This document shows positions 14,111-61,700 of a stretch of 64,000 nt of DNA, in pieces (position 1 is the stretch's first letter; each line of letters opens with the position of its first letter). The stretch is from Chrysemys picta bellii (Eukaryota): assembly GCF_011386835.1 (NCBI RefSeq), contig NC_088809.1, positions 12,896,001 through 12,960,000 on the forward strand. The letters run 5' to 3'. The position numbers and the translations under genes were made by a program. The notes under the pieces were generated by a model. It ran no database searches and was not told the DNA's origin. It saw only the letters and a program-made list of their open reading frames with translations.

Positions 14111-14234
14111 TTTATTATTTATTGTTACTAACAATAGAAAGATTTTACAACCTAAGACAATGGACACAACCAATCCCTCATGTAAAGATGAGAGGTAAAG
14201 CCCTCGGTTTATTGGCCTCTTCCCACCCTTTATT
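14111..14234 (-). terminator. MRPS17 polyadenylation signals (three AATAAA)
   Basis: Minus-strand AATAAA at 14229-14234 (overlaps the stop codon), 14208-14213 and 14111-14116. Confidence 0.5.
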
Positions 14235-15938
14235 TCTCTGTTGAGGAAACATTTAGTTCTTGGAGCTTTTCACTTAGATAGGTGGTGTCTGCCTCAGTTA
14301 GACTTTCTGAGTCTGTTAGACTTTCCAGGAACCTGGTTCCTGCGCAGGCCTTTCCAGTCACTGGGTCTATGACATTTCCAACCTTGAAAACAATCTCAGC
14401 CAGTTCATGTTTCACATTTTTGGTCCTCCGCTCAGGCAAAGCTTTTAGAAGAACAATGTCTCCGACGGCACAACTCTGCAATGGATCATGAGCGAAATAA
14501 GTTTTTCGCTTGTTAAAGAACTGTTGGAGAGAAGGAGAAAAGGAAACCCAGGCATTAGGACTCAAAACTAAAAGATGACCAGTAAACTTATGTTCAAAAG
14601 CAAAATGAATTGGAAGTTTCGTTATCAGGCTGATTGTGCAGGTATGCATAACTAACTGGGTTTTTGGCCAAGCAAAGCCACTGATGGATGCATATGGTAT
14701 AACAGTAGAACTGGGCAAATGTAACATTTGCTCTTCTTCACCCAGGATAGGTCTTTTGCCCTAGGTAGTGTCACTATTCACCAGTCCCTGACTCATCGAC
14801 TCCATTCTTGACCGCTAGTTACCTCTGGTTTATCATCTCAGTCCCTCCCATGCTTAAGAGGCACCAGAACGACAGTGCATCACATTCAGCAAAAAGGGTT
14901 GTCAAGGCTCTTCCAAGCCTAATAATAATTTGCATAAACTGCAGAGGGGAAGAGGTCAGGAAACTATATAATTCTCATCCTTCTCAATTCACCCAAGTCC
15001 CTATCACTGTGGTATTAGTGTTGCACCAATATCTCCCATATGAGCACATTTTAGTCCAGTTTTAGTAACTTTTATTGTCTGGGGAAAATATCAGGATTCA
15101 GACTATATCCTTTGAGAAGATTATGTAAATTATGATTGAAAAGTTGTGGAAAATGCACACTAAAAACAGAAAAGAGTCAATTACAAATCTAACCTACCTT
15201 CTTTTATCTTATAAAGTGCAGAATTGACTAAAGGGAGCATAGTTTCTCTTGAATCTAGTCTTTAATAATAACTGAGGGAGGCTTGCCTTATAAATAGTCC
15301 GATTATTTTATTATTGATAGATCTATATTGATTCAGTGGTTCAAATGCTAAAGAATATTTCTGCAATTACTTATTCAACAAAGTGGTTAGGAAAAAGATA
15401 TAGTAGGCAATTATTTTAATATCACCATATACAAAAACATTTTATTTTATAATTTCAAGCTTTCAAAATGGAGCAAAAACCCAGAAACTTATAAAAAATT
15501 TTTAAAAGGACTTTTCAAAAATCAAAGCACGAAATTAGTAGTCCACTTTCCCAGCTCAAATCAAAATGTGTGTTAACAGAATCATTCAAGGAAATGCACT
15601 TAATAGATAATCTGATACGGCAAATTTTATGTTTTTACACTGGTTTTTCTTTCTACGCAGTCATATTCAGAGCCAAATTACCACCCAATGTTCTTAATTA
15701 GTTAACAGTGTAAACAGTTTACATGAAATCCTAGTATTTCAGAAACTCAATACAATTTTCTTTGATAGTGAATATGAAAATGATCTTGCAAAGTAAGTTG
15801 GTGACCAGACCTTACCTTGAGTAAATAAGGATCCAGCACAAGCCTTGTCACTCTCACTTTGGCAGTTTTGTGCATTTTGGTTCCAATTACTTTCCCTATT
15901 ATCCATTTTGCATGGACAGCTCCACGTAGTCCAGACAT
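14230..15938 (-). CDS. MRPS17: Mitochondrial ribosomal protein uS17m (137 aa), two coding exons
   Basis: Coding exon A 15816-15938 ([41 protein letters not shown], acceptor at 15963 in the UTR, donor GTAAG). Exon B 14230-14520 ([61 protein letters not shown]...STEK*). Contains the S17 family signature. Confidence 0.97.
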
Positions 15939-17707: not shown

Positions 17708-17979
17708 TCCGTGACTGTAGCTCATCGGGGATAATGATACAGGAGTGTTGTGAAAGCTGAATCACTAGCGTTTATAAGGCATCAGAGATGCACTGGGAGA
17801 GAAAGTGCTGTAGGCAGGAAGGCCCAGACCCTTACAAGTATTTAGTCCCCTAACTCTCATTGATGTCAATGGGAGTAAACCACCTAAGTACTTTTGGAGG
17901 ATCTGGGCCGAAGCGGTCTCACCGGGAGGGGAAGCATTTAGGAAGAAAAAGCTCAAGTCAAGGCAGCTGTCGTGGCCCT

Positions 17980-18780
17980 GTCCTGAGAAGCCCCCAGAGC
18001 TCCCTCCCTGCGAGCACCCCGCCCCCAGAGTCCCCCTCTCCCGCCCTTAGAGCCCCTGCTGCCCCATCCCCCCTCCCTCCCTCCCTCCCTCGGCAAAGGC
18101 CAGCCCCAGAGCAGTCGTTCCCCCGACCCCAGCGCCGAGCAGAGGCCCGGGACCTTACAGCGGCCTCCGCTCTAGGCCGCGCTCCGCCCGCGGGCTCTGC
18201 CAGTGCAGCACGCCCCAGCGAAGCAGCGACCGAACGGCCAGCTCCTCAGCGGCCAACACTCCCGACTCACCTCACCGACCAGCCAAGGGGGAGGAGCCAG
18301 TGCCGGAAGGGGCGGGGCCAAACCCGGAAGGGATAGGACTGTCCCTGGGGCGCGACAAGGGGGCGTGGCTAACCGCTGTAGAGGAAGGGGAGGGGCCATT
18401 TAAAGGCACAGGGGCGGTCCATGCAGTAGCAGTGTTACCCCTGTCCTCAGGGGAGGAGAAAGGAAGGCCCCCGCTGTGGCAATGGGGGGAAGGAGCATGG
18501 AGGCGTATGGCTCCCTGCCTCCCCCGGGATTATAATGGGCTGGAACAGGAGGGGAGCTTGGGCTGCAGCCCTCAGGCAGGGGAGCTCTGTTGCTTGTCAT
18601 AAAGGGGAATCTAGGCTCAACTTCAACCCCTGCACCTGAGCAACAGGGTGCGCCCACCCGGGGGGCCGGGATGGAGGCCTGGTTGTGCGGGGTGGCTGGA
18701 CTTGGGCGGTTGGAATGGGGTGGCTGGGCTGGAAGGGCCTGAAGCAAAGGACAGGGAGGAAGAGAAAACAAGACCGGAGG
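17980..18780. promoter_or_regulatory. CpG island / MRPS17 promoter with non-coding first exon, possibly bidirectional
   Basis: CpG-rich. Two ETS/GABP CCGGAAG motifs (18303, 18325) and GC boxes. Minus-strand donors GTGAGT/GTGAG at 18265-18275 give a likely MRPS17 exon 1 end. Confidence 0.75.
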
Positions 18781-19893: not shown

Positions 19894-20090
19894 TTTCAGA
19901 GTAGCAGCTGTGTTAGTCTGTATCCGCAAAAAGAAGAACAGGAGTACTTGTGGCACTTTAGAGACTAACAAATTTATTAGAGCATAAGCTTTCGTGGACT
20001 ACAGCCCACTTCTTCGGATGTAGTCCACGAAAGCTTATGCTCTAATAAATTTGTTAGTCTCTAAGGTGCCACAAGTACTCCTATTCTTCT
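19894..20090. mobile_element. Penelope-like inverted pLTR unit
   Basis: Roughly 70-bp inverted arms with 2 mismatches, tail on the left side. Flanking duplication TTTCTCAGAAGG (19882-19893, 20091-20102). Confidence 0.82.
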
Positions 20091-39400: not shown

Positions 39401-42400
39401 GCCTACAAAAGCCACCATGATTGGTTCCAGTTGCCCCTGTGGAGAAGCCAAGGATTGAATGATCCATGAAGACTGAACTCTGTCTTCATTTACAGAGCTA
39501 GTGCCTCCATCCTGACCTGGAGGGACCATGGCAAGAGAGGGCATGTAGGGAGGCATTGGCATTTTCTACCTGCACTCTATCTGTTCTGTGAATAAGTAGA
39601 AGACTTCCATCTCCAGAGCTATAAATCCAGCACATTTCATAAAAGTTCAGTTGGCTTTAAAGAGATTACAGATCATCCCCCATACAAAGAAGGGTGTGTG
39701 TGTGTGGAGGGGAAGGTGTGAGAGAGAGCAATATTTCAGTTAACTGGAAGACTGATCAGGAGAAAACATCAGCACTGGAATCCCCAGGAATTAACAATAA
39801 AAGCGGAGCATAGTCTGTCCCTTTCTTTTCAATGAGTCCTTTCAAATTGGGGTCCAAATTCTGCTCTGGTGTAAATCCAAAGTTAGAGGTGTGCATGTAT
39901 TAAAACATTCATTATCTTCTACGATTCAAACACAGCCTTGCTTTGGGCAAGATGTTTGAATGACTGTTACCCACAGAGTAAAATGAGCTATAACCAGTTT
40001 TATTTATAATCTCAGTGAAACCGTATCTGAAATCAGATGACCGGCGCTGAGATTATGCAACAAAATGCAAATGAGTGAATCGGAATAGAGTGCTAATTCA
40101 TGAGTCACAGCAAAGGCCAGGATCTAAAAGAAGGGAGCTGCTTTTATTGTACTGTTGAGTTGAATTCAACATAGGAAGTGAAACACTGTGCTGGCCCCCT
40201 TGCAATATAGCCCTTTTTCACTTACCCCTCAGAAAACAATTTGGGAGATGGACTCTGAATAAGGAAAAGTTCCGTGAACGGGTCCTGATGTCCAGATTTT
40301 ATCCTTCAGGCCTTTTGTTGTGTATTTCCTGTTTGTTTGGTTTATAACCAGAGTTAGGGTGACCAGACAGCAAGTGTGAAAAATCGGAATGGGGGTTGGG
40401 GATAATAGGAGCCTATATAAGAAAAAGACCCAAAAATCGGGACTGTCTATAAAATCAGGACATCTGGTCACCCTAACCAGAGTGGTGTTGGATACTTCAC
40501 AAGGGCAGGCTTGGAGTGTTAAATTTGTTAAAAAGACAACTTCTAGAGATTAATAATAACTTCATTATAATGATGACCATTGAATTTGATGGCCTCAATC
40601 CAGTTCATCACAAAGCCACTGTCACAGCTGGCACTAACTGGTCCCATTGCTGGCAGCTTCAACTTCTAAAATCCCTTAGCAATCTGATTGCAGGACTGGA
40701 AACCAAGAACTCTTGTTGTCTAATCCCAACTCTGGCTCCGATTCTCTGAGGTCTCGAGCAATCATTAACGTCTTGCCTCAATTTCCCCTCTATGCTGCGG
40801 ATAATACTTTCACGTAGGTGTGGGTTCGTTATTGTCTGCTGTAGAAATAGTATTCAGTAGTTTCAACTTTTTATTGATCCAGACTTTTCTGCTTCCTTTT
40901 TTTTTTCCCAGCTAACTATTAAACCTCTTGATAAAAAAGCAGAAGTTTTCAAATTCTTTTCCTCGCAGCTCAAAGTGAACAAACTGGTAAGTGGGCTGCT
41001 GCTCTTTTAAAAAATCTGAATGTAGTAACAATTTCAGTTGCATTGATTGATATCAGAATGAGAAATCTTATTCAGGATACCGCCATGGTCATGTGTGTCA
41101 TGAGTATTGGTACTTAAGAGGCCTAAAGCCATAATAAAAATTAGTGTTGCAGTGATTTAGTGACAACCCAGGGTTGTGAGTTCAATCCTTGAGGGGGCCA
41201 CTTAGGGATCTGGGGCAAAATCAGTACTTGGTCCTGCTAGTGAAGGCAGGGGGCTGGACTCAATGACCTCTCAGAGTCCCTTCCAGTTCTAGGAGATGGG
41301 ATATCTCCATTAATTTATTTATTTTATTTTATAAAAATTAATGAGAGAAACTGGTCTACCATATTGTGCCCTACATGAGAGAACCCACCCGGGGACCAAG
41401 AAACTTTGTCTGTCTGAACACTTGCTTTTTTCCTCTTAAATTATTCTGTTTGTGGGTGACTTTGCCCTCTTTTTTTAGAATGGGCATGGGAGGAGACTCA
41501 CCAACTGTGTAAAAGACCAGAGAGCCACAGGGAAATCCTGCAGATCTAAGGCAAGGGCATTGTGGGAAGGCAGGATGCCCCCTTTGCTTCCTCAGGAGCG
41601 GTGCTTCTGTGGATTCTCATTTCCTCAAGGAACAACAAGGAAAGGGAAGCAGCATACGATACTGCTGACTGGGTTGCCGTTATCTTTCATTGAAATATCC
41701 CTATGGGATTGATGGGGGAAGACACCGGCTCAGTCCTCTCCCTAGCTAACCATATCCTTTCCCAACCTGCAGAGCCCTCATCTTATTATGCACCTGTGGA
41801 GGGTCTTCTGCAGATGACCTGCCATGCCACTACTGCTCTTCTCCCTCATATGCCCCCACCCCGACTAGTTCCATTTCCCTCTCTTACACCAGCAGAACTG
41901 GAGGAGAAATTGGTGCCAGAGAAGGTGACTGAATAAGGAAAGAGACTTTCAGCCTGTTCTGAACCTGTCCAAATCATATATTTGCTGACTAAAGATGTGC
42001 CTTACCTTGACTTGCTAGGCTAGAAACCTACAAAACTAATTGTCACTTTTATTGGAGGGGGAGGAATTGCTAGCTCCTGATGACTCTGAAGTTCGCCCCC
42101 AAGTAGGAGATGTGTTTGCATTCCTGTGCGGTGCTCTTCACCCAGCTCACTGCAACTCACTTGTGTTGCAATTGCTTTGCTTTTTGCAGATTTTACAGTT
42201 GTGCATTGGAAACCATGACTTGTTCATGAGAAGGAGAAAAGTGGACTCCATCGAGATCCAGCAAATGAAAGCTCAGGCCAGGGAGGAAAAGGCTAGAAAA
42301 AAAGTAGGTTCCTTCTGCTCCTTGTTGCTGAAAGTATTTATTATTCCATTCACTACACATATGTTATTCTTCACCCTACTTGTTCATATCATGAGCAGAG

Positions 42401-45400
42401 ATGAATTTGTGTATGTGTGTGTGCGCTCTCAGTGGTGTCTGTGTTGATGCATGTGGAGGGACTGAGAATATGAGCAGCTGTGGGAGGTGTGGAATGTCAG
42501 AGGATACAGTATGTGTGTTGTGCATGGGTGGTATCTGTGGTAGAGGGATGCTCATGTGTCACTCCTCCCTTTGTACTACACCTGCGCAAGTGCTCCATAT
42601 GGACAGCACTTTTAAATAACCAGGCTCACCAGCTGTCGGATTCAATACAGATGAACTGCCCTGGCAATTTGCAAGATGCCCTGATAGTAGCAAATAGCCG
42701 TGCAGCAGCCGGACAGCTTTCAGTTCTCTAGAAATATTTACCCAGTTTGCTCTGCAGTCCCAGTCGGTGAGCGTCACTCATTATCTTTCCAGATGGAGAC
42801 TCAAAGGCTGGCCAGGGAGAAGCAGCTCAGAGAAGAAGCAGAGCGAGCCAAAGAAGAGCTGGAAAGGCGCCTCTTCCAGATGGAAGATGAAGCCAGGCAA
42901 GCCAACGAGGCACTGGTGAGCATTGCAGTAGTCTGTGAATGTCATCTGGCCTTGGGCGAAGTCAAGATTTATTAGCTCCTTTTCCTGTGGCGTTAGCTAG
43001 GACACTGAGGGAATATCTGTACTGCAATTAAAAACCTATGGGACTGAGTCTCAGAGCCCAGGTCAATTGACTCTGGGTCACAGGGCTCAGGCTGCAGGGC
43101 TAAAAATTGCAGTGTAGCTGTTTGGGCTCGGGCTGGAACACAGGCTTTGAGACCCTCTGTCCTCATGGGGTCTCAGACCCCGGGTTCCAGCCCAAGTTCG
43201 AACATTGACACTGCAATTTTTAGCTCTGCAGCCTGAGTTGGCTGACCGGGGCCAGCCACGGCAATGCCACAGGTCTCTTATTGCAGTGTAGATGTGCCCT
43301 GAGGGTTATTGTTAAGGAAAGGAGGGAGATTTTCTGGGAGGCAGGGCATGCTTGCACTCTTGCAGGGAGCCAGGCCTGCCCCCAATCTCAATTTGCTGGG
43401 TACCATCCACTTCCCCCTGATTTTTCTGCCAACACCTTGTTCAGGCCTGGAGCCAGAGGGAGAGGAAAGCAGGCTGCATCAGGAACTGAAGCTGTGGAGA
43501 AGCCGGTAGCAGGTGGGACTGGTAGCTGAAAGGAGGCAGGCAGAGTTCACTAGGCTCTGCCCATTTGGGAGACGTCTTAGTCCAGTGCTGAGTAAAGGAG
43601 GAGAGGTCTTATACGATGGAAGGAGTGAAGGAGAGTGGAAGGCAAGAATACTGGAGCAGAGGGAGACTAGACATCCTGGAAATGTTTACTTGGCTCTAGG
43701 CCCTCAGTAAAGAGGGCTAAGGACGAATATAATGATCCTTGGTATGTTAAGGGTTAATATTATGATGATCTGCAGGGGAAAGACCTCCTGCTTCTAAGCT
43801 GACTCTAGCTATTTTTCCTTTCTAAATGTTGCATCATAGTAGCTAAGATAAATCCGGTCTCTTTCTAGCTCCGGTCCCAGGAAACAGCAGAGCTGCTGGC
43901 CGAGAAAGCTCAGATTGCAGAAGAAGAGGCCAAACTGCTGGCCCAGAATGCTGCAGAAGCTGAGCAAGAGCGGCAGAGGTTGGAGATCACAGCACTGAAA
44001 ACCAAGGAGGAGAAGCGTCTGATGGAGCAGAAGATGCGGGAGACAGAGCTGATTGCAGTAAAACTGGTGAAAGAGTCTGATCGAAGGTTAGATTTGCTCG
44101 TGGGTCTGGTGGGTGGCATCTGTCAGCCATGGCACTTGTGGATATACTGTGGGACTATCTTCCTAGAGTTTACGTGTGGAAGGAGGAATTCCCCAGGTGA
44201 CACTTCACAGCTTTGTGCATCTTGTTCATTCCCACCTTGTACCAGTGAATTTGAAATTAGTGCCAGAAATTTTAACAAAAATTGCATCCTCAGCTGTAGA
44301 GTTTTAACTGTAACTATGCAGCCACTCCTCCTTAGCATTATCGAAAGACTGAGGGCTACTAATGGAGAGTCTAAACGTAAATGTAAAGCCTTGTGAACGC
44401 TAGAACCATGCTAATTAGAAGAGTTTAAACTTATAAGCGGTTTGCAGGATTCTATTATGGGGTTCCTAACCCAGTGTAATGCACTTAATATAGACACTGT
44501 TGTAGATTATGTATATTCTATTGTTCGCACATGTATAGAATGCGAGGGCTCAGTGCTATCCTAAAATACAGGGCGTGCCTCATGTTATTTGTTGTTGTTA
44601 CAGGTATTTGTAAAGTTCTTATCACCCTGGTACCTGATGGCACTTTACTTATGCTAGTATGGTGTTAAACAACATTTTCCCAAAACAGGGAGCACTTGCT
44701 TGTCTGAAAAGTATCCCAAAGAGGATCTTTGATGTCAGATAATGGTTGAGGGCCCAGAGATTACAAGAACTGGGCCCATAGGAATTAGAGATAGAAAAGA
44801 TCTATTAAATCAGCCAGCTAATGCAGGACTGTTCCCGCAATCACCTCTTCTTGTGCTTTGTCCAGTTTACAATGTCCCATGCAATCAGGCTTTAACCTGT
44901 GGAGACTATTTCGAAGGCTAACGGATGTCTCTCAGGAAACCAGCTAGGTGTATGAACTCAGTGTGTTGCCACATGTTTGAAATCTACCACCTAACGTTCA
45001 CAATATGTTTGTCTGACAGAGCCAAAGAAGCTGAACATCTAAAACAGGATCTGCATGAAGCCAGGGAAGCTGAACGAAAAGCAAAGCAGAAACTTCTGGA
45101 TGTAACTAAGCTTAATTATCTTGTAAGTTACCCAGTTTACATTCTGGGCAGCCCTTTATTGGAGAGTGGACAAATAACCAATCATCATTTCAATGTAGAT
45201 ACAATGTAACTAACAAGTAAATACACATTATCCATGAAGCTTGCTCAAGACACTTTGTTACCAAGCTGATGTATTTGTAACCTCTTTGTACTTTGCAGTC
45301 TTTGGACTTCACAATTTTAACATATCATGACAATTTAAGGAATATCTATCTATCACCATCACTGTTAATCACGTAGCATACACAGTACCCAGAGATGTTT

Positions 45401-46940
45401 GCAATTTAAGGATACCTGGATGTCGTACTGACAGAAGTGAAATATGGAAACTGAGTGACATTGAGAGAACTTTAGGAAGGGCTCAGAAAAGGAGCTTTGT
45501 GGATGAAAACTTGTCTGCGGCTTCAAACTTCTTTTGTATGCTCCAGTATAGCAAAAGAGGGAATCTGCATTGTCAAAACAGAGGATTGGGACAGTCGGGT
45601 TCTACTCCGTTCTTTGCCACTGTGTCACTATGTGAACTAGGGCAAGCAATTTAGGGTAAAATTTTCAAAAGCGTCCGAGTCCCATTTTCAAAAGTGCCAG
45701 ACTCCTCAGTACTTTAGCTTTTATTTTTGTGAGCATAACCGGATAAGATGAAAGTTTCTTCCTCCTGGCCTGTGTTTAAAGTAAAGCTGTGGGCTTGCAC
45801 AGAAGCAGTATTTGCCACTGTGACCTGAGGTGCCAGGAGCAAATGCCATTACTCCTTCTTATGGGGAAGCCAATCTATGCACATGCTGCACTCTGTGTGA
45901 TATCCACGAAGTTTAAAAACTAGATGGGAAACATTCCAGCCATGCTGCTTCTCTCGCATTGGCACACAGTCTGTATGCATTGTAATGTATTTCATTGAAG
46001 GCTAACATTTTATTTCAAAAAGATTTGTTTAGGGCCAGCCAGCCAGGGAGGAAAGGGATATGAATGCCTACAGCCATCTTTAGAATCAATGGGAAGACAT
46101 CAATTTGGGAGACCGCGTGTGAGATTTTTGTAGAAGCTAGAAATATACTTGAAATTAAAAACAAATGTTCTAATTTTATTGTTAATGGAACAAACTCTTT
46201 TTTTGATTATCTTGCATCTTTTAGCATGTGGCCCGGTATCCTCATCATTCACCTGCTGACACCAGAGATGTCAACTTTGACAAAGGATCTGTAAAGATGG
46301 ATTTAAAAGATGTAGATCTGAAGAGACTGTCCTTTGAGATAGAAAGAGAGAGGTACTGGAACACTCCTAAGATGTAAATAAACTAGGGAGTCTTAACCTG
46401 GGAAATTAGAGGTGGAAAATACCGGTTATGTCTCCTGATGTATCCTCCTACCAGTGCAGGATTGTTCCCCACAATACATATGGGTGATTGCCTTATACAG
46501 AAGTAATAGCATCAGCTCTGTAACACATTAGCTTTTTAGAAGGAGAAAAGATGTTTTCTTGGCATCTAGCCATGAAGAGTACAGAGATCTGGGATTTAAA
46601 GGAATACATTGTCTAGGGGCAAAGCACTATGCTCTGATATGAGTATGCAGGAGGATGGAAACAACTGACTGGTGCATTGAGAGGGCTTTCCTTTCCTTTG
46701 CCCCATTGTAGACTGTATACTGGACTACGGGAACCATTGTTCTGTTATGGTCTTTCCTACATTCCTGTGAAAAGTGGCTTTAAAAATCTACCAAAAGACT
46801 ATTCAAAATGTTCCTAGATATTACACTTGCTTGCCAACACAGATCTTGGAGAATATCAAGTTGGTTCTGTGGCTATCTTGAATGTTAAAATGGTTTATAA
46901 GCTGCATTGTGGGCAAATGGACATAAAGTGGCAAGACTCA

Positions 46941-46974
<34 letters not shown>

Positions 46975-49348
46975 TTTCACTCCGCATGCACTATAAAGTA
47001 TGCTATGCTTTCATAGAGTTTATCGTCAGAAGAGCCCATTAGTCAGCTAGCCTAACTTCCTGTATATCACAGCCCAGATACCCCCATATGGAGCCAAATA
47101 ACTTCAGCATTATCGGTATCTGACTGATTGAAATGCATTAATGTTCTGATAGTACATTAGCTGACAATGCAAGGAGCTAGTACACTTATTTGCATCATGG
47201 TTGTGCCTAGGACCCCAGCCATGGACCAGGACTCCATTGTGCTAGGCAATGTCCAGTCACAAAACAAACAGATGGTCCCTGCCCCCAAAGAGCTTATGAT
47301 CTAAGTAGAAGACCAGAGACAACAGATGGATGCAGACAGACTTTGTCTTACCTATACCTATTGTGGGACCCTCTATGATTCTGCAGATTCCTATATAAAG
47401 CTGGTTCTCCAACTGTTTAATAACACCTAACAGGAGATTCTGTGTGTGACTGCTGGATTTCTAGTTGAAAGGGAGCAGGTCTTGCTGTGATCATCTGGAA
47501 GTAAATGTTTCTTCACAGGTTTCCCATGCAGCCCATAGCCTGAGCTTACATTTCTAACCATTCCCCTTTGTTCTGACTTCTCCCAGTTAAAGCAAACCTC
47601 CCTCCGCAAGCAGACCCAAATCTGTAAACTTCCTGCTGGTGCTGTCAGCAGTTCAGAATGAATGTAATGACAACGAAAGAGAAGTCAGGGTCACTGAAAG
47701 CCTTTCCCTGTAATGAAACAATTGGAGAACAGAGGTCCAGGCCCATTTGGAGCAAATATCAGACTAAATAAAATACAAATCGGATGAAGTTATTGACTGT
47801 CAGTTGAATAACTTCAAGTGTCAAATTAATTTCTGATGTAAGATAAGTGGATTTACAATGGGGATGGGTTTTGCCCCAGAAGCTATGAATGAAAATGTCT
47901 TACAAATTGCCCTTACAAAATAGATGAATGTAAAAACTACAAAACCCTCCTTTAGAATCATAGAATATCAGGGTTGGAAGGGACCTCAGGAGGTCATCTA
48001 GTCCAACCCCCTGCTCAAAGCAGGACCAATTCCCAACTAAATCATCCCAGACAGGGCTTTGTCAAGCCTGACCTTAAAAACCTCTAAGGATGGAGATTCC
48101 ACCACCTCCCTAGGTAACGCATTCCAGTGCTTCACCACCCTACTAGTGAAAAAGTTTTTCCTAATATCCAACCTAAACCTCCCCCACTGCAACTTGAGAC
48201 CATTACTCCTTGTTCTGTCATCAGGTATCACTGAGAACAGTCTAGATCCATCCTCTTTGGAACCCCCTTTCAGGTAGTTGAAAGCAGCTATCAAATCCCC
48301 CCTCATTCTTCTCTTCTGGAGACTAAACAATCCCAGTTCCCTCAGCCTCTCCTCATAAGTCATGTGCTCCAGCCCCCTAATCATTTTTATTGCGCTCCAC
48401 TGGACCCTTTCCAATTTTTCCACATCCTTCTTGTGGTGTGGGGCCCAAAACTGGACACAGTACTCCAGATGAGGCCTCACCAATGTCAAATAGAGGGGAA
48501 TGATCACGTCCCTTGATCTGCTGGCAATGCCCTTACTTATACAGCCCAAAATGCCATTAGCCTTCTTGGCAACAAGGGCACACTGTCGACTCATATCCAG
48601 CTTCTCGTCCACTGTAACCCCTACGTCCTTTTCTGTAGAACTGCTTCCTAGCCATTCGGTCCCTAGTCTGTAACAATGAATGGGACTCTTCCGTCCTACT
48701 TGCAGGACTCTGCACTTGTCCTTTAGAGCTACCACTGGCTAATTAGATTCATATTTTGTCGTCTTCTCTCCCTGTGTGGCTTGCAGGTTAGATTACTTGG
48801 AAAAGAGCAAAAAATTTGAAGATCGATTGAAAGAGCTGAAGTCAGAAATCCATGCACTGAAACTAGAGGAAAAACAAAATGGGCTCTACTCTCACTGGAA
48901 TGAAGTTCTTGGATCCTTGGATCGTTCAATAGGAAATGTATGTAACCCTAAATATAGGTTTTATAATAAGAATAACAGATAAGCTTACTCATGCAGTAGA
49001 AACTAATAAATATAGAAGGTTCAGTTAACACCATAAACAAAGGGACATTAGAATCCCTATAATGTTTCTAAAAGCATATGCTAAACATATACTTCATATT
49101 TTGGTATGAAACACACATTCACTCTCTCTATTGATAATAAAATGTGAAAAGTGGGTCTGGAGACATTAAAAGTGGCATTTTCCGCTGGAAGCGTTTTATG
49201 GGAGGAATCCCCTCAAATGTATAACAGTCAAAGATTGTGAGCTCCCAGGAAGAGTCCCATAAAGGTTGAAGGCTGTTGGGCAAAATAAGCTCTTGCAAGC
49301 TCAAAACAGTTAAATGTGGCATAGTTGTAATCAGTCTCTTTCTACTTC

Positions 49349-49408
<60 letters not shown>

Positions 49409-51179
49409 GTCAGCTTTTTATGCTAGATTCTTTTGATTTAGCAAACAAACTTTTGAGCCCCTTTCTGGACCGGTGCAACAGTAATAGGCCCCAGCCCTTC
49501 CAGATTTCTCCAAACCTAGTAGAAATTTGTCTTAGACTTAGAGTAACACACATTAGAGACAAAAAAGGGAGGCTTGGGTGAGAGAAGGCTCCTATAATTT
49601 CAGGTCCATGTATTTATGCCTTTGGCTTAACGTGAGCTGATGGAGTGAGAACACTATTTCACATATTCTGTCCTTTAAAGGCTCCCTCATGGATGAAAAC
49701 CTTTGGAGCTGGAGACTTGTTGGATATAAATCTTGGAAAGCCCTTCCCAGCTTATCCATTAAATGCCACAAGCAGCTGGCCATGTACCAACAAGAATCAA
49801 CATACAGTGCCTGTGGAAAAGTCAACTTTTCAAACAAATACCTTGGTTGCCAGCAATGTGGGGACAGGAACTAGAAAACAGATTATAAAGGTAATGGGAT
49901 TTATATGTATTTTCCCAACATGTGAATGAATTTAGTGCTTGTGAAAGTAAGGAATTAATAGGTTGGGCAAGCTTCTCCCACCCAACTCTGCCAGTGCCCC
50001 TCAATCCCAAACTGTGAAGGACTGCTAGTTATTCTAGTCCTTCAGTTTCATGCCATTTAAGGCAGCTTGTAAGATGGGCATCACAGGGGCTAGGATGAGA
50101 TCAGCTGACTCCATTCCACCTGTGATCAAAGCTGGACTATGAATGAAAGATAAATCCTGTTAGACAACAAGAGGATTTGTATTCAATAGCTGTATTTTCT
50201 TTATAGTTTGACCAAGCTTGAAAGTAAATTAATATGTCCTCAGTGCTGGCATCAACAGTTTAAAACCTAAACATGATTCCCTTCTGCACTAGTATTTATG
50301 GCTGTGAAAACCTAACTTCCAGCATTAAGGGGCAGGTAATAAGATACCAGTAACAGAAATTGACCAGACCGCCTACAATTCAGCTCTTATGTGGCAATGG
50401 TCATAGAACACCGCCGCTCTATCAGCTGTTTCACACCAGTGCTGTGTGGGTCCATGAGGGAGACCCTGTGTTCTTGTATGGTTGGCTCCTTCCATGCGAG
50501 TGAATACATTGGGGGGGGGATATAAAAGCTCAGTCTGCTTCTAGAGTTGACTAACTGGAGTGAGGATTGGAGGGGTGTAGGAATCCTATTCTGAATGTGA
50601 GACTAGTTTAAGGGCAGGCAACTGTTACTGAACAGTTACCAACAAGTAACTTTATTTATGCACTACTAATTGTGCTGGTTGCCCGAGAACTAACTGGAGG
50701 TTTAAAGGAACATTTGTCTGTGAATGAGGCTAGGGCAAGAGTTTCTATTCTATGATCAATAAACTTGAGCTGTGCTTCGTATATTTATGGTAAAGATTTT
50801 TCAGAATCACTAGAGACTGTCACATGACCTTAACTTGCAGACTGTAGGCATAGAATTGTAAGATACAAAGTCCAATGCGGTTGGACAGAAGCAGCATCTT
50901 CCTAATGCAAATAATAAGGTAATTGTTTTAAGAAAATAGAATCCAAACTGCAAAGTAATGTCTGTCAGTGTGAAAACTTCCATGGGGAAGACAGGAAAAA
51001 AAGTCAAGCAATTTTGATGTGACTTCCTCAAGGCCACAGAGTTGATGTCAAAGCCAAGCTTAAGAGCTAAGGAATTCCTGGCTCCCACTCATATGCTTAA
51101 ACAGAACTTTAGGGTGGAAATAACTTCTTTGATTTGCACGTAGGTTCAGCAGCAAGACTCGGACGTGATCTACATTTGA
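26089..51179 (+). CDS. NF2L: Merlin-like / NF2-like FERM protein (paralogue of NF2), 17 coding exons, 648 aa
   Basis: Exons: 26089-26178, 29348-29473, 29860-29982, 35259-35342, 36329-36397, 36655-36737, 37973-38048, 38948-39085, 40912-40986, 42190-42303, 42793-42915, 43869-44086, 45020-45122, 46225-46352, 48787-48937, 49681-49890, 51144-51179. They sum to 1947 nt with an open frame and all GT-AG. Exons 2-7, 9-12 and 14 have the same lengths as I recall for human NF2. Merlin-specific motifs: [28 protein letters not shown] (blue box), [22 protein letters not shown]. The last two exons are supported by splice sites and frame only. The symbol follows the name I recall for the chicken gene. Confidence 0.92.
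26203..26231 (+). repeat. (GA)n microsatellite
   Basis: About 14 GA units, contiguous with the left TSD of the hAT MITE. Confidence 0.9.
26234..26536. mobile_element. GC-rich hAT-family MITE in NF2-like intron
   Basis: TIRs CAGGAGCGGCTC / GAGCCGCTCCTG and a perfect 8-bp TSD GAGAGAAC (26226-26233, 26537-26544). Confidence 0.9.
26790..27150 (+). mobile_element. LF-SINE (ancient lobe-finned-fish SINE) remnant
   Basis: Matches the recalled consensus blocks TGGTCTCAGT.CAGTTCC.AGTGGA, CTCAGCAGAGAGGCCAAGGATTGAAT, GGTCCCTCCA and GGGAAGCTTG..CTGCC. Confidence 0.72.
30404..30448 (+). repeat. (GA)n(GT)n microsatellite
   Basis: Direct inspection. Confidence 0.85.
31398..31615 (+). mobile_element. MIR/CORE-type SINE
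   Basis: tRNA-like head (GCATAGTGCAGTAG...GAGTCAGGACTCTGGGGTTC) followed by core GGCAAGTTGCTTA..CTCTGTGCCTGTTTCCCCTAT. Similar fragments lie at about 2290-2430, 10590-10740, 24330-24470 and 38100-38330. Confidence 0.6.
38347..38707. mobile_element. GC-rich hAT-family MITE
   Basis: TIRs CAGGGCTGCCCAGA / TCTGGGCGGCCCTG, a perfect 8-bp TSD GGTCACCT (38339-38346, 38708-38715) and an internal duplicated subrepeat. Confidence 0.92.
40355..40475. mobile_element. hAT-family MITE (same family as 18844-18968, opposite orientation)
   Basis: TIRs TAGGGTGACCAGA / TCTGGTCACCCTA and a perfect 8-bp TSD ACCAGAGT. Confidence 0.92.
41165..41330 (+). mobile_element. Tortoise Pol III/SINE, 5'-truncated
   Basis: Starts at AACCCAGGGTTGTGAGTTCAATCC (B box only) and is otherwise like 16932-17119, ending in an (ATTT)n tail. 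Confidence 0.85.
43011..43288. mobile_element. Harbinger-type MITE, older
   Basis: Terminal GGGAATATCTGTACTGCAAT / ATTGCAGTGTAGATGTGCCC with internal inverted subrepeats. Confidence 0.65.
47953..48722 (-). mobile_element. Young 5'-truncated CR1 LINE with uninterrupted RT C-terminal frame
   Basis: 232-aa ORF 48037-48735 ([23 protein letters not shown]...[13 protein letters not shown]...FKVRLDKAL). CR1 3' terminal repeat (ATTCTATGATTCTA on the minus strand) at 47953-47966. Candidate TSD TCCTTTAG (47948-47955, 48719-48726). Confidence 0.95.
49351..49400 (+). repeat. (TG)25 microsatellite
   Basis: Perfect 50-nt TG run followed by (AG)4. Confidence 0.95.
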
Positions 51180-54100
51180 AGCGTCTCTGCAATTCAGTAA
51201 TGCTTTCATCAAGAAGTGAATAGGCAGAACTTCGGAGTAATCCATTTGGCTGCCACAAGTTACTTACACAAAACCACTACATACCTTTAGCTACTCGATG
51301 TCAGCATCAAAACATATCCTGTAATGAGAGTGTGGTGCTGCTCAGTGTCCAGAGAGGCAGCGTATGCCTGTAGCACTGAAAATGACAAGCATCTTTCATA
51401 GTGGCAAACGTGAAATAATATAAGAGCCAAGTTACATCATTTGTGTTTCGTGAGAACATTTTACATTTAAAATGCCTTTTATCCTAAAGTGCTTTTTAAA
51501 CTACAGAGCACCGCTGAAATACAGGACCTTTTAAAGCAAAGAGAGTAGCAAATAGTCAGTGGAACACACTGGGGGAGGAGGAGATGTTTAGGAAAATTCC
51601 TGCTTTTATAAAAAAATTTACACAGAGCACACATGACTTTATGTTTTTAAGTCTTAGCAGCTGGTGGGACACTTCTAAAGCCTGTTTCAGCATAGTTAGT
51701 CCACAGAACATTTTTCACTTCTTATCCCTAAACATAACAGACTGTCCACATACTTGACTTGTATTTCTATTAGAGACAGTCCAATCCTAAATTTAGAATT
51801 AAGAGCTAGACAGGCTTTTTTGGTAGGTCTTAATACATCTATTTTGATGTCTCATGGAGATATGAATGAATCCTTAGTGTGGAAGTGCAAGGCTTCTGTT
51901 TCTATATGGTTTTTGTGATAGTGTGGAATACCTTTGTTGCTGCCACCTGTAGAAGACTGCATAACTTACTGGCTCAGAGAAGTTTAAGTACTAGAGACAA
52001 AGGACACCTAACTGGTATCTGCTAAAGAGGGACTCGTCTCTGATGAAGACTAAACATGGTATCTACCACCCAGCATCTACTTTATCAGTAGAACCACTTT
52101 ATACTTGAGGATGTTGTGCATTAAATGTATATTTAACTGAGATCTTCATACAGACTTCTATGGAAGTAGACAATACAAAATTGTAGCTAAAATATGTTGA
52201 ACATGCAGGACAGAGTAAAAATGGATGTTAATGTTCATAAACATCTACTCCTATAAGTTAAAAATCTAAAGTATATTGAATAAAGCTTCAATTCCTTCTA
52301 GCTGTCAGCTTTTTAAATGTGTATGTGTATATATTGCTTGGATTTAGCTTTAAAGGCAGAGTATGAACTACTGAAAGTTTTTCAGCTCTGAGCACTGACA
52401 AGGTAGGTGTACTACATGTGCTTCTTTACTAGTCTTCATCTCTACTTCCTCACTTAACTTGCTTATCCTCTAAACAGCAAGTTGACAATTAAAACCTCTA
52501 CATGTATCTTCTGGAAAAGAAATTGATTTGTATCCATATTCAGGAAAACACTGTGCAAGGAAGTACAGGTGTTAGTTGAAGTAGAGCTGAAAGTCAACAC
52601 ATGGGCTAGTCAACAACTTTAATAAGGTTTATTTTGATGTTGTCAGCCATTCTTCCTGACCCATAAATACTAAACAAACCAACTGTACATAAATTACAAA
52701 AAATCAAAAAGGAACTCCCTCTACTAAGAAAAAACCTGAACAATTCACCCAAATTCTAGAGAAGGCTTTACATGGAAATAGACTCCCCCCCTCCCTCCCC
52801 TCCCCAAGTTTGTGAACTGGATTCTGCTAAATTATGCAACTCCTCTTTCTCCTGCTAGCTCCCAAGTTTGCTCTTCAGAAACTATGCTTTATCCCTAAAG
52901 AAAAACAGCTCTAATCATTATGGATGCAGTGATGGCTGAAGCTGTCGGCAACCCAAAACACTAGATAAGAGTAATGAATTGCCCAGTTAATCTCAATGGG
53001 ATATTGATACTGATAAGTATCTTTGGTGCTCAACCATCTCAAAGATGAGCACAATCAATGGCTTATCAACATGGGGAAATGTGCCAGCTTAACTGTACTA
53101 GTATAGTTTGTGTGTAGCCACTTAGTCTAATGTATGTCCACATAAGAAGACATGGCAGCAAAATCACACAGGTAATTTCAATTTTCAAAATGCTTAATGA
53201 CTAAGGAACCCATATCCCACTGACTATCAGTGGGACTTAAACTCCAATGCAACTTAAGTACTTTTACATTTCTTATTGGCCTCCCCTGCAATCTGACCCA
53301 TGAACAAGCTCAGGCTGTCAAACTAAAGGGGAGGTAAATTCCTGAGGGGCACAGAGGGGCTTTGCTAGGTACTTGTGTGTTAGTTTATAACTACAACAAA
53401 CAGATATTGCTATCATCATCTAGGTCTTCACAGAAACTGTATGCATCAAATCAGAGGACAGCTGACACCTGTCACAAAATACATATGCCACTTCCCTCTA
53501 GGAGGCAGCAAGTGACCACAGTACTGGCTCATCCCCTAAACTAGGAAACAGAAATGGTACCAAACAACTAATGCATATTTTGCTGCATCATACTACTGTC
53601 ACAGAAGTTGATGTTTAATGCCAAGGGCTCCATTTAAACTCCATGTTTATCCTTGAACAATCCATGGATGGGTAGGCCAAGTTAATATCATTTACTCTTT
53701 CCCCACTATTGTGTATTCTGCCTCAGGAAGTATGAATACATCTTAGAGCTGCTTAGCTGTATTATTCATATACTATCTTGTTTGAAAAACTGTACTGTAA
53801 TTTTAGCAAAGTAGTTTAGAGTGCTGTCTTCTGCAGCAGGTGGGTTGGTAGAAAGTGTGTGTGGACATCAGCAAGACACACAAAGGGTTGAACATGAAGA
53901 TACTAGAGAGGTTTAAAGCATTTTGGCTTTTATCTTGGATAAGGAAAGGAACATATACAAGTCCAGCAGGGGAAAACTAAGGTACGCTGGGAGCTTCTCT
54001 ATCTCAAGGAGCAGATTCCTTTACCTAGTCTAGATCAGGTTTATTTTAGTAGTGAATTTTTGCATATTTTGGGAGCACAGCTTCAGCCTCACAGAAGCAT

Positions 54101-54601
54101 AAAGGACCACTACACTAGTGCCAGATCCTATAAAATACTTTATATATATTATAATTCATTTAACAGTTGAAAGAATGAATTAGGGGAACACTTTTCTCCA
54201 GGTTAGGATGTATATTTTGCATGTATCCCATGAATAAAATATATAAGAATGGTCTATTTACAAATAGTGAAATTTCTCTAGCAGTAGCATGTGGCAGTCT
54301 AGGTCACTCATGTTTAATGCTGCCATTAAACAAGGTTAATAATATACACAGTAACTCCATGCACTGTTTTAAGAGTGACACTTCATTTAATTCTTTTGTC
54401 TGTGCATGTTTCTCCTCATACGCAATAAACGGCTCTGGGATAGATGCAGCCTTCCACCCAGCACTAAATTAAAGGGAAAAGGGCTTGGTGCAGATGAACA
54501 CCAATATAATCAATACCCACACCAAAACAAAGCTAGTATAGCCTTTCACTGTTAAGTCCTATAACTTTATGCTTAGTGCAAATCGAACACTCAAACACCT
54601 C

Positions 54602-54607
54602 TTTATT
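54602..54607 (-). terminator. Candidate SBDS polyadenylation signal
   Basis: Minus-strand AATAAA about 185 nt after the stop codon. Confidence 0.45.
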
Positions 54608-54789
54608 AAAAGGCACTTGTTACCCAGACAAATGCAAGGAAACACGGCCTGGAATAATCCCAAATAGAGCTAGTGACAGCAATTATTTGGCAGCAATAGG
54701 TTGGAAAAACAAAAACCTTAACAGAATGAGGTGGCCTAACTCTGCCTCTTTATAGTGTTTGCCACAAAAGTGATGTTGGTGGAAGGGTT

Positions 54790-61700
<6,911 letters not shown>

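What the first reader, a model, noticed from the sequence alone, without database searches (positions are those of the whole stretch)
49681..51179. Merlin paralogue has swapped the auto-inhibitory tail for a novel ~80-aa C-terminus ending in a PDZ-ligand-like motif
Seen: after exon 15 (…[12 protein letters not shown]) there is no LTLQSAKSRVAFFEEL-like exon. Instead a 210-nt in-frame exon (49681-49890, cctttaaag|GCT … AAG|gtaatg) encodes [71 protein letters not shown] final exon (51144-51179) encodes [11 protein letters not shown]. Established: the NF2 isoform-1 and ERM C-termini fold back on the FERM domain to control the open/closed state. Inference: this protein may be constitutively open or regulated differently. 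The terminal V-I-Y-I fits a class II PDZ-binding motif (hydrophobic-X-hydrophobic-COOH), suggesting different scaffolding partners.
Basis: partly seen in the sequence, partly recalled or inferred. Interest (0 to 1): 0.75.

Follow-up and report, generated by a model that had tools for sequence, protein, structure and literature searches.

The report
Merlin paralogue's conserved isoform-2-like tail
The two exons are real, spliced and conserved, and they end the turtle copy of nf2b ("merlin1"), a published NF2 paralogue lost in most placental mammals, whose tetrapod form carries an ancient 11-residue tail (…SDVIYI) in place of the last FERM-binding helix.

Summary
Transcript contigs from three studies and two turtle species carry both predicted GT..AG junctions, 48937>49681 and 49890>51144. 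I found no FFEEL-type exon in the window or in five other amniote loci.

The feature is not new. The gene is the tetrapod orthologue of fish nf2b. Shabardina et al. [quoted passage not shown] NCBI annotates it as "merlin-like" in many species, and 69 of the retrieved tetrapod proteins end in DVIYI.

- **Tail replacement is partial.** Only the last helix of the C-ERMAD is replaced. Pfam ERM_C still matches profile positions 3-40 of 77, and the Ser518-equivalent site (KRLS) is invariant.
- **The 210-nt exon is tetrapod-specific.** It is under moderate purifying selection (dN/dS 0.10-0.40).
- **The 11-codon last exon is ancient.** The same exon, …[DE][VI]IYI*, lies between exon 15 and the FFEEL-type exon in sturgeon and elephant shark nf2b, and bichirs have it as an annotated alternative isoform. 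This is the position, length and phase of NF2 exon 16 (isoform 2, …PICI).

Tetrapod nf2b therefore appears to be a constitutive isoform-2-type merlin. The PDZ-ligand idea fits the sequence but is untested.

The parts
26089..52295 (+). Whole nf2b / 'merlin1' / 'merlin-like' gene, 17 coding exons, from the start codon ([14 protein letters not shown]…) to the mRNA 3' end
   Evidence: tblastn of turtle proteins P0055 and P0042 recovers every exon at 90-100% identity. The 3' end comes from contig ends and the poly(A) signal.
46225..46352 (+). Exon 14 (start approximate). It ends …[12 protein letters not shown](R) and holds the Ser518-equivalent KRLS site.
   Evidence: tblastn. The loose ends of spliced contigs at 48785 read the end of this exon. 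R-L-S is invariant in 49 aligned merlins.
48787..48937 (+). Exon 15 (…LDYLEKSK…DRSIGN), the last part of the retained half of the C-ERMAD. The donor is |gtatgt.
   Evidence: Pfam ERM_C matches profile positions 3-40 of 77 in the proxy P0055.
49681..49890 (+). Tetrapod-specific insert exon, 70 codons, phase 0 at both ends. It has conserved islands (PSW, PF.., LN, GTGTRK.I.K) and is predicted disordered.
   Evidence: Junctions are seen in three studies. The same exon with AG..GT borders is present in bird, gecko, koala and echidna loci. dN/dS is 0.10-0.40. It has no Pfam family and no counterpart in sturgeon, shark or tilapia loci. pLDDT is below 35 in a poor model.
51144..51179 (+). Last coding exon segment: 11 codons plus stop, [11 protein letters not shown]. 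It is an exon-16-type (isoform-2-type) terminal exon.
   Evidence: The junction is. 69 retrieved tetrapod proteins end in DVIYI. The codons GTG ATC TAC ATT TGA are identical in turtle, birds, gecko and koala. Homologous 11-codon ORFs lie in sturgeon L006:18517-18552 and elephant shark L007:12356-12391.
51180..52295 (+). 3'UTR, with AATAAA at 52279-52284
   Evidence: Contigs of X5, X9 and X11 run unspliced from 51142 to 52225-52295. The signal is read.
52617..60987 (-). Neighbouring convergent gene SBDS (context and synteny marker). Its mRNA 3' end lies about 320 nt from the merlin-like 3' end.
   Evidence: Pfam SBDS_N, SBDS_domain_II and SBDS_C match minus-strand exons. Contigs start at 52617/52651, next to a TTTATT at 52628-52633.

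Best explanation
Shown:
- The two exons are the genuine 3' coding exons of the turtle orthologue of nf2b (= 'merlin1' of Shabardina et al. 2019, NCBI 'merlin-like'). This is the second gnathostome merlin gene, lying between MRPS17 and SBDS.
- The protein keeps the FERM domain, the coiled coil, the first half of the C-ERMAD and the KRLS phospho-site.
- After exon 15 it continues with (a) a tetrapod-specific 60-70-residue segment under moderate constraint and (b) an 11-residue terminal exon ending SDVIYI-COOH. That tail is invariant in all amniote clades sampled.
- The same 11-codon exon sits between exon 15 and the FFEEL-type exon in elephant shark and sturgeon nf2b, and it is an annotated alternative isoform in bichirs.
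- Amniotes have no recognisable FFEEL-type exon.

Inferred:
- The terminal exon is the counterpart of NF2 exon 16 (isoform 2, PQAQGRRPICI). Tetrapod nf2b would then be a constitutive isoform-2-type merlin that cannot form helix alpha4C, so the alpha4C site on FERM lobe F3 is not capped in the ERM manner (about 0.7).
- The disordered insert acts as a flexible spacer that presents the C-terminal carboxylate motif.
- The motif is a short linear ligand. The most likely partner is a class II PDZ domain (about 0.35-0.4). Otherwise it is a cis or trans ligand of the protein's own FERM domain (about 0.25).
For: - **Splicing.** Both junctions are present in contigs of three studies and two species, joined to upstream exons and to a polyadenylation-signal-bounded 3'UTR.
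- **Orthologues.** 94 tetrapod proteins were retrieved and 69 end in DVIYI: marsupials, monotremes, xenarthrans, birds, crocodilians, turtles, squamates and one of two frogs (the other ends DIIYI).
- **Exon structure.** The exon and intron layout is the same in bird, gecko, koala and echidna loci.
- **Selection.** Nei-Gojobori dN/dS is 0.10-0.40 for the insert exon and 0.04-0.14 for exon 15. The last four codons plus stop are identical at nucleotide level across amniotes, bar one synonymous change in echidna.
- **Region identities, turtle against finch / koala / gecko.** Insert exon 71 / 41 / 49%. Last exon 100 / 91 / 82%.
- **Domains.** ERM_C covers only profile positions 3-40 of 77, against 2-77 in sturgeon NF2.
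- **Fish tails.** Teleost, sturgeon and shark nf2b end in …FFEEV or …FLEEL. Bichirs have both …VYLEDV and VGHYDSEVIYI isoforms.
- **Unannotated exons.** Sturgeon has VGHYDSEVIYI* and elephant shark has AGSHEAEIIYI*. Both follow AG acceptors and lie between exon 15 and the FFEEL-type exon.
- **NF2 exon-16 tails.** Both are also 11 residues: sturgeon HVSQGRRPVCI and human PQAQGRRPICI (PMC6515277).
- **Tree and synteny.** These support orthology.
- **Literature.** The paralogue and its insertion are described in PMC6978628.
Against: - Sequence similarity between the NF2 exon-16 peptide and the nf2b …VIYI peptide is very weak: one identity plus V/I. Homology rests on position, length, phase and the hydrophobic-[C/Y]-I end.
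- MAFFT can equally align DVIYI with RVAFF of the FFEEL exon.
- Use of the shark and sturgeon exons in RNA was not checked.
- The genomic order in bichirs could not be fetched.
- No binding partner was tested.
- The AF2 model had pTM 0.25 and says nothing reliable about docking.
- Conservation of the KRLS site suggests that open/closed regulation persists, which argues against a simply 'constitutively open' protein.
- Run X1 shows unspliced contigs across introns 15 and 16, and sea-turtle annotations include read-through tails, so isoforms without DVIYI may exist.
Confidence: 0.8

Rival explanations
1. The SDVIYI tail is an intramolecular (or dimer-forming) ligand of the protein's own FERM domain. 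It would replace helix alpha4C, so auto-inhibition is kept by a different contact and is still switched by phosphorylation of the KRLS serine. On this reading it is not a PDZ ligand.
For: The first half of the C-ERMAD and R-L-S are invariant across 49 merlins, which suggests the head-to-tail machinery is still in use. MAFFT aligns D-V-I-Y-I with R-V-A-F-F of the alpha4C exon. The tail is more conserved than the FERM domain itself, as expected for a co-evolving internal contact.
Against: Eleven residues are too short for an alpha4C-like helix. A 60-70-residue disordered spacer separates the tail from the retained CTD helices. AF2 gave no confident docking, although the model is poor overall. 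The review on NF2 isoform 2 considers such a tail unlikely to form alpha4C (PMC6515277).
Confidence: 0.25
2. The last exon is a shortened derivative of the FFEEL-type exon (exon 17), in other words a degenerate alpha4C. It is not a counterpart of NF2 exon 16.
For: The alignment places DVIYI opposite RVAFF. Both exons follow a …I-[IK]-K| boundary in phase 0.
Against: Shark, sturgeon and bichir nf2b carry both exon types in one gene, with the …IYI exon upstream of the FFEEL-type exon. The …IYI exon therefore cannot be the tetrapod remnant of the FFEEL exon. An older tandem duplication of the exon is not excluded.
Confidence: 0.07
3. One reading: a lineage-specific novelty in which the paralogue swapped the whole auto-inhibitory tail for a new ~80-aa C-terminus, giving a constitutively open protein with new PDZ partners.
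For: The FFEEL-type exon is absent. The insert exon has no fish counterpart. I-Y-I-COOH fits the class II consensus.
Against: The tail was published and is annotated widely. Half of the C-ERMAD is retained. The last exon predates tetrapods by more than 100 million years.
Confidence: 0.1
4. The exons are non-functional: an annotation artefact, an NMD-targeted isoform or a decaying gene end.
For: Run X1 shows intron-retaining contigs. Some annotated isoforms end in read-through peptides.
Against: Spliced contigs come from three studies. The reading frame, splice sites and residues are conserved across amniotes with dN/dS well below 1. The stop lies in the last exon, so NMD is not expected.
Confidence: 0.02

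Closest known systems
'Merlin1' of Shabardina et al. 2019 (Genome Biol Evol, PMC6978628), which is NCBI 'merlin-like' in tetrapods and nf2b in fishes
   Same: It is the same gene. [quoted passage not shown] The window protein matches Chrysemys P0042 almost exactly.
   Different: The paper does not mention the exon structure, the invariant SDVIYI-COOH end, PDZ motifs or isoforms. It treats the segment as an insertion within a continuous C-terminal domain. Here the residues after the insertion are shown to come from an exon-16-type terminal exon, not from the FFEEL exon.
Human NF2 (merlin) isoform 2, with exon 16 included and C-terminus 580-PQAQGRRPICI-590
   Same: It is an 11-residue terminal exon with an in-frame stop, placed after exon 15 and before the FFEEL exon. 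It replaces helix alpha4C and ends hydrophobic-[C/Y]-I-COOH (PMC6515277).
   Different: In NF2 it is an alternative exon. In tetrapod nf2b it is the only annotated end and is preceded by an extra 60-70-residue exon. The peptides are barely similar in sequence. The review states that the exon-16 end is restricted to sarcopterygians, whereas a sturgeon NF2 isoform (P0223) and shark and sturgeon nf2b loci carry such exons.
Fish and shark nf2b proteins with a canonical end (…RNSAYMAQMAFFEEV, …LNLQSVAAKTQVAFLEEL)
   Same: They are orthologous by tree and by MRPS17-nf2b-SBDS synteny. FERM, coiled coil and exon 15 are closely similar.
   Different: They keep the FFEEL-type exon and lack the insert exon. 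Tilapia has no …IYI exon in the corresponding intron.
ERM C-ERMAD (Pfam ERM_C, PF00769)
   Same: The first half (profile positions 3-40) is present and scores above the gathering threshold.
   Different: The second half, including the F-actin and FERM-binding last helix, is not matched.
Class II PDZ ligands such as the neurexin/glycophorin C …EYYV, syndecan …EFYA and ephrin-B …YYKV ends (from my own knowledge, not tested)
   Same: A free C-terminus with hydrophobic residues at positions 0 and -2 and a tyrosine at -1.
   Different: No binding data exist for …VIYI. The resemblance is only a consensus match.

Membership tests
Merlin/ERM family | FERM_N + FERM_M + FERM_C lobes followed by the ERM alpha-helical domain | tested here: met
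   Pfam finds all four domains in the turtle proxy P0055. Every exon is recovered in the window at 90-100% identity.
Merlin/ERM family | Complete C-ERMAD (ERM_C), including the last FERM-binding helix alpha4C | tested here: not met
   ERM_C matches only profile positions 3-40 of 77 in P0055, against 2-77 in sturgeon NF2 P0221. No FFEEL-type exon is found.
nf2b / 'merlin1' orthology group | Groups with fish and shark nf2b, apart from NF2/nf2a, in a phylogeny | tested here: met
   The NF2 clade has support 100/100 and the tetrapod merlin-like clade 100/99. Rooted on the NF2 branch, the remaining side follows the species tree. No outgroup was available, so the root is assumed.
nf2b / 'merlin1' orthology group | Conserved neighbourhood MRPS17 - gene - SBDS (convergent) | tested here: met
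   Window: Ribosomal_S17 at 14233-14760 on the minus strand and SBDS at 55.6-61 kb on the minus strand. The same neighbours occur in sturgeon L006 and elephant shark L007, and SBDS is downstream in gecko and echidna.
NF2 exon-16-type (isoform 2) terminal exon | A short terminal exon with in-frame stop, phase 0, lying between exon 15 and the FFEEL-type exon | tested here: met
   The exon is 11 codons in turtle, birds, gecko, koala and echidna. In sturgeon (18517-18552, between 17774 and 20045) and elephant shark (12356-12391, between 11923 and 14404) it lies upstream of the FFEEL-type exon.
NF2 exon-16-type (isoform 2) terminal exon | Recognisable sequence similarity to NF2 exon 16 | tested here: inconclusive
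   Only the equal length and the hydrophobic-[C/Y]-I end are shared: HVSQGRRPVCI and PQAQGRRPICI against VGHYDSEVIYI and [11 protein letters not shown].
NF2 exon-16-type (isoform 2) terminal exon | Used as an alternative to the FFEEL exon in the same gene | tested here: met
   Polypterus isoforms X1 (…VYLEDV) and X2 (…SEVIYI) and Erpetoichthys X2 are annotated. RNA support was not checked here.
Class II PDZ-binding motif | C-terminal hydrophobic-x-hydrophobic-COOH | tested here: met
   I-Y-I-COOH, invariant in the 70 tetrapod proteins that end DVIYI or DIIYI.
Class II PDZ-binding motif | Actual binding to a PDZ domain | not testable with these tools
   No binding assay or complex prediction is available. 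AF2 on the monomer was uninformative.

The most novel reading that the evidence does not exclude
The isoform-2-type C-terminus (an 11-residue exon ending hydrophobic-[C/Y]-I-COOH, placed between exon 15 and the FFEEL exon) is an ancestral feature of both gnathostome merlin genes. It would predate the NF2/nf2b duplication and would not be a sarcopterygian novelty as currently written. Tetrapod nf2b made it the only ending and added a disordered spacer. Its conservation over roughly 450 million years, down to the codons ATC TAC ATT TGA, implies a specific ligand function such as class II PDZ or FERM binding. That function may carry over to the poorly understood NF2 isoform 2.
Probability: 0.35. 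Interest if true: 0.6.

Novelty: already known. Interest (0 to 1): 0.38.

Why it matters
What NF2 isoform 2 does, and whether merlin works in an open or closed state, are long-running questions. Tetrapod nf2b appears to be a natural merlin that has only the isoform-2-type end, and that end is more conserved than the FERM domain.

This gives a clean system for asking what such a tail binds. Chicken, Xenopus, turtles and marsupials all have the gene. It also explains part of what placental mammals lost with this gene.

The gene and its 68-residue insertion are already published and annotated, so the finding itself is not a discovery. The new elements are the exon-level origin of the tail and its depth in evolution.

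Tried and rejected
- **AlphaFold2 on the full-length proxy.** I folded P0055 with a 49-sequence alignment. The result was pTM 0.25, with even the FERM lobes poorly modelled and the tail 549-648 at pLDDT below 35. It cannot test a FERM-tail contact.
- **Possible FFEEL relic.** A profile scan gave LNLELRARQAFLVGL at 51787 in the 3'UTR. It recalls the shark LNLQS…AFLEEL exon, but it ranks 93rd among about 57,000 windows, has no following stop and is not matched in other amniotes. I rejected it as chance.
- **Ancestor of the insert exon.** tblastn of the turtle, frog and gecko insert peptides against the sturgeon, shark and tilapia loci gave only noise.
- **P-A-Y-P-L-N motif.** I considered that P-A-Y-P-L-N in the insert exon corresponds to the fish exon-15 end (PPYIPHSN, AYTPLSN). 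The motif is too short to decide, so this is left open.
- **[R/K]xxPxxP in the insert.** I considered it an SH3 site, but the last proline is not kept in birds or marsupials.
- **Failed genomic look-ups.** Polypterus, Erpetoichthys, Ascaphus and Leucoraja genes were not on record. The bichir exon order and the frog and skate loci are therefore untested.
- **Representative search.** It was run with exon 15 rather than the new exon so that orthologues would be found whatever their tails.
Full report
**1. Observation**

49681-49890 is 70 open codons between ..cctttaaag| and |gtaatg. 51144-51179 encodes [11 protein letters not shown] followed by TGA, after ..gcacgtag|. Exon 15 ends …DRSIGN|gtatgt at 48937.

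The window holds a complete 17-exon merlin-type gene on the plus strand, from the start codon at 26089. It was recovered exon by exon with turtle proteins.

**2. Transcript evidence**

Logan contigs of four runs from four studies were laid on 48500-54400.

- Three runs (X5, X9, X11) contain single contigs that join 48937 to 49681 and 49890 to 51144. X11 is labelled as another species. Both skipped parts are GT..AG.
- These contigs carry the end of exon 14 upstream ([10 protein letters not shown]).
- Downstream they run through the stop into a 3'UTR that ends near 52295, just after an AATAAA at 52279-52284.
- In these runs the introns have no or almost no depth, so the material behaves as mRNA.
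- The only difference inside the 210-nt exon is T>C at 49812, the third base of a proline codon, and it is synonymous.

Run X1 behaves differently. One contig splices exon 14 to exon 15 and then runs on into intron 15. Another is an unspliced 4.3-kb contig covering 49431-53704. Intron-retaining forms or another overlapping transcript therefore exist in that material.

**3. What the gene is**

A search of the protein representatives with exon 15 gave a full-length koala "merlin-like" protein and a partial protein of unidentified origin, both ending …DVIYI.

Word-index searches then returned 94 tetrapod relatives, mostly NCBI "merlin-like". Of these, 69 end in DVIYI: marsupials, monotremes, the xenarthrans Dasypus and Tamandua, birds, alligator, turtles, squamates and the frog Ascaphus. 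A second frog ends DIIYI. The rest are truncated or read-through models. Chrysemys picta bellii P0042 has the window's insert-exon and last-exon residues exactly, so the window comes from an emydid turtle or a close relative.

The fish counterparts are named nf2b. In a maximum-likelihood tree, NF2/nf2a forms one clade (100/100) and tetrapod merlin-like another (100/99). When the tree is rooted on the NF2 branch, the other side runs sharks, ray-finned fishes, coelacanth, tetrapods, as the species tree does.

Synteny agrees:
- The window has MRPS17 on the minus strand at 14.2-14.8 kb and a convergent SBDS at 52.6-61 kb.
- Sturgeon has NIPSNAP-MRPS17-nf2b-SBDS-TYW1, and elephant shark has MRPS17-nf2b-SBDS.
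- Gecko and echidna have SBDS downstream.

**4. Prior knowledge**

Shabardina et al. 2019 (PMC6978628) describe this paralogue as "merlin1". It is present in most vertebrates and lost in Eutheria except armadillos. [quoted passage not shown]

That paper contains no mention of VIYI, PDZ, exons or nf2b. A full-text search for DVIYI found nothing relevant. The core of the finding is therefore already known and annotated. The motif-level and exon-level points are not in the literature I could search.

**5. How much of the tail is replaced**

Pfam finds FERM_N, FERM_M, FERM_C and ERM_helical. It also finds ERM_C above threshold, but only over profile positions 3-40 of 77. Sturgeon NF2 matches positions 2-77. 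The residues R-L-S of the KRLS site, equivalent to Ser518 of human merlin, are invariant in all 49 aligned merlins.

So the protein lacks the last part of the C-ERMAD, which includes the terminal helix alpha4C, and not the whole auto-inhibitory domain.

**6. Conservation**

Identity of a sea-turtle proxy (P0055 Caretta) to finch, koala, gecko and Ascaphus:

| Region | Finch | Koala | Gecko | Ascaphus |
|---|---|---|---|---|
| FERM | 93% | 90% | 89% | 66% |
| Insert exon | 71% | 41% | 49% | 21% |
| Last exon | 100% | 91% | 82% | 55% |

The three-exon layout with AG..GT borders and phase 0 is the same in two birds, gecko, koala and echidna.

Nei-Gojobori dN/dS is 0.10-0.40 for the insert exon and 0.04-0.14 for exon 15. 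The last exon has few sites, but its final codons GTG ATC TAC ATT TGA are identical in turtle, birds, gecko and koala.

None of the six amniote loci has a FFEEL-type ORF downstream of exon 15.

**7. Origin of the last exon**

- Teleost and sturgeon nf2b end …AFFEEV or …AFLEEV, and sharks end …VAFLEEL.
- Bichir nf2b has two annotated isoforms after the same exon 15, one ending …STVYLEDV and one ending VGHYDSEVIYI.
- In the sturgeon locus an identical 11-codon ORF VGHYDSEVIYI* lies at L006:18517-18552. It sits behind ..tttgactgtag|, between exon 15 (ends 17774) and the FLEEV exon (20045-20083).
- In the elephant shark, AGSHEAEIIYI* lies at L007:12356-12391. It sits behind ..cactaactag|, between exon 15 (ends 11923) and the FLEEL exon (14404-14442).
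- Tilapia has nothing comparable in its 690-nt intron.

The chance of an [VI]IYI-stop ORF of exactly 11 codons after an AG in the right intron is of the order of 1 in 1000 by a rough estimate of mine.

This is the arrangement of NF2 exon 16. That exon adds 11 residues (human PQAQGRRPICI, PMC6515277; sturgeon HVSQGRRPVCI) and lies between exon 15 and the FFEEL exon 17. I infer, with a probability of about 0.7, that the two are homologous and that the alternative end predates the NF2/nf2b duplication.

The review's statement that the exon-16 end is confined to sarcopterygians does not fit the sturgeon NF2 isoform.

**8. Origin of the insert exon**

The insert exon is present in frogs in very diverged form and in all amniotes. 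It is absent from fish proteins, and tblastn finds no trace of it in sturgeon, shark or tilapia loci. It is therefore a tetrapod addition.

It has no Pfam family. Its composition and the low-confidence AF2 model suggest disorder.

**9. Mechanism**

*Shown:* the protein lacks alpha4C and ends in an invariant free-carboxylate motif on a variable spacer.

*Inferred:*
- Like NF2 isoform 2, it cannot cap lobe F3 in the ERM manner.
- The motif is a ligand. It most simply fits a class II PDZ domain, because I-Y-I fits hydrophobic-x-hydrophobic and resembles …EYYV and …EFYA ends that I know from the literature.
- Alternatively it binds the protein's own FERM domain.
- The conserved KRLS site argues that conformational regulation persists.

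None of these inferences could be tested with the tools available.

**10. Verdict**

The feature is already known at the level of the gene and its insertion. The new, testable point is that tetrapod nf2b uses an ancient exon-16-type tail as its only annotated ending.

Noticed in passing
window 14233-14760 (-), 26089-52295 (+), 52617-60987 (-); L006, L007: The gene order MRPS17 - nf2b - SBDS (with NIPSNAP before and TYW1 after in sturgeon) is conserved from elephant shark and sturgeon to the turtle. From memory, human NIPSNAP2/MRPS17 (7p11.2) and SBDS/TYW1 (7q11.21) lie on either side of the chromosome 7 centromere. If so, the eutherian loss of this merlin gene maps to that interval.
   Followed up: partly
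window 48785-49341 and 49431-53704 (run X1): In one study the contigs are not spliced at introns 15 and 16. One contig joins exon 14 to exon 15 and then reads into the intron, which would give …[19 protein letters not shown] 4.3-kb contig at higher depth spans intron 16, the 3'UTR and the gap to the SBDS 3' end. Sea-turtle annotations contain the matching read-through tails (…[14 protein letters not shown], …FYNKNNR).
   Followed up: partly
window 52279-52633: The merlin-like and SBDS mRNAs converge. AATAAA lies at 52279-52284 on the plus strand and TTTATT (AATAAA on the minus strand) at 52628-52633, with contig ends about 320 nt apart.
   Followed up: partly
P0223 (Acipenser ruthenus merlin isoform X2): A ray-finned fish NF2 proper has an annotated exon-16-type end, HVSQGRRPVCI. 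This contradicts the statement in PMC6515277 that this alternative C-terminus is found only in sarcopterygians.
   Followed up: partly
window 51165-51179; L006:18538-18552; L007:12377-12391: The last four codons plus stop (ATC TAC ATT TGA) are identical at nucleotide level in turtle, birds, gecko, koala, sturgeon and elephant shark, synonymous sites included. Echidna has a single ATT-to-ATC change. This may point to a constraint beyond the peptide, such as a splicing or 3'-end signal.
   Followed up: no
window 49355-49400: A (GT)n microsatellite followed by (GA)n lies in intron 15. Read contigs break there.
   Followed up: no
L003, and P0091-P0094 and P0101 (lacertid lizards): Lacertid 'merlin-like' isoforms of 715-749 residues end in a long unrelated, hydrophobic tail (…LNMKVPLTVALVINSH) instead of DVIYI. 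This is either an alternative 3' end or a fusion with a downstream gene model.
   Followed up: no
window 9500-10400, 17800-18700, 60200-61700: These GC-rich stretches have long open frames on both strands and look like CpG islands. The last one overlaps SBDS exon 1.
   Followed up: no
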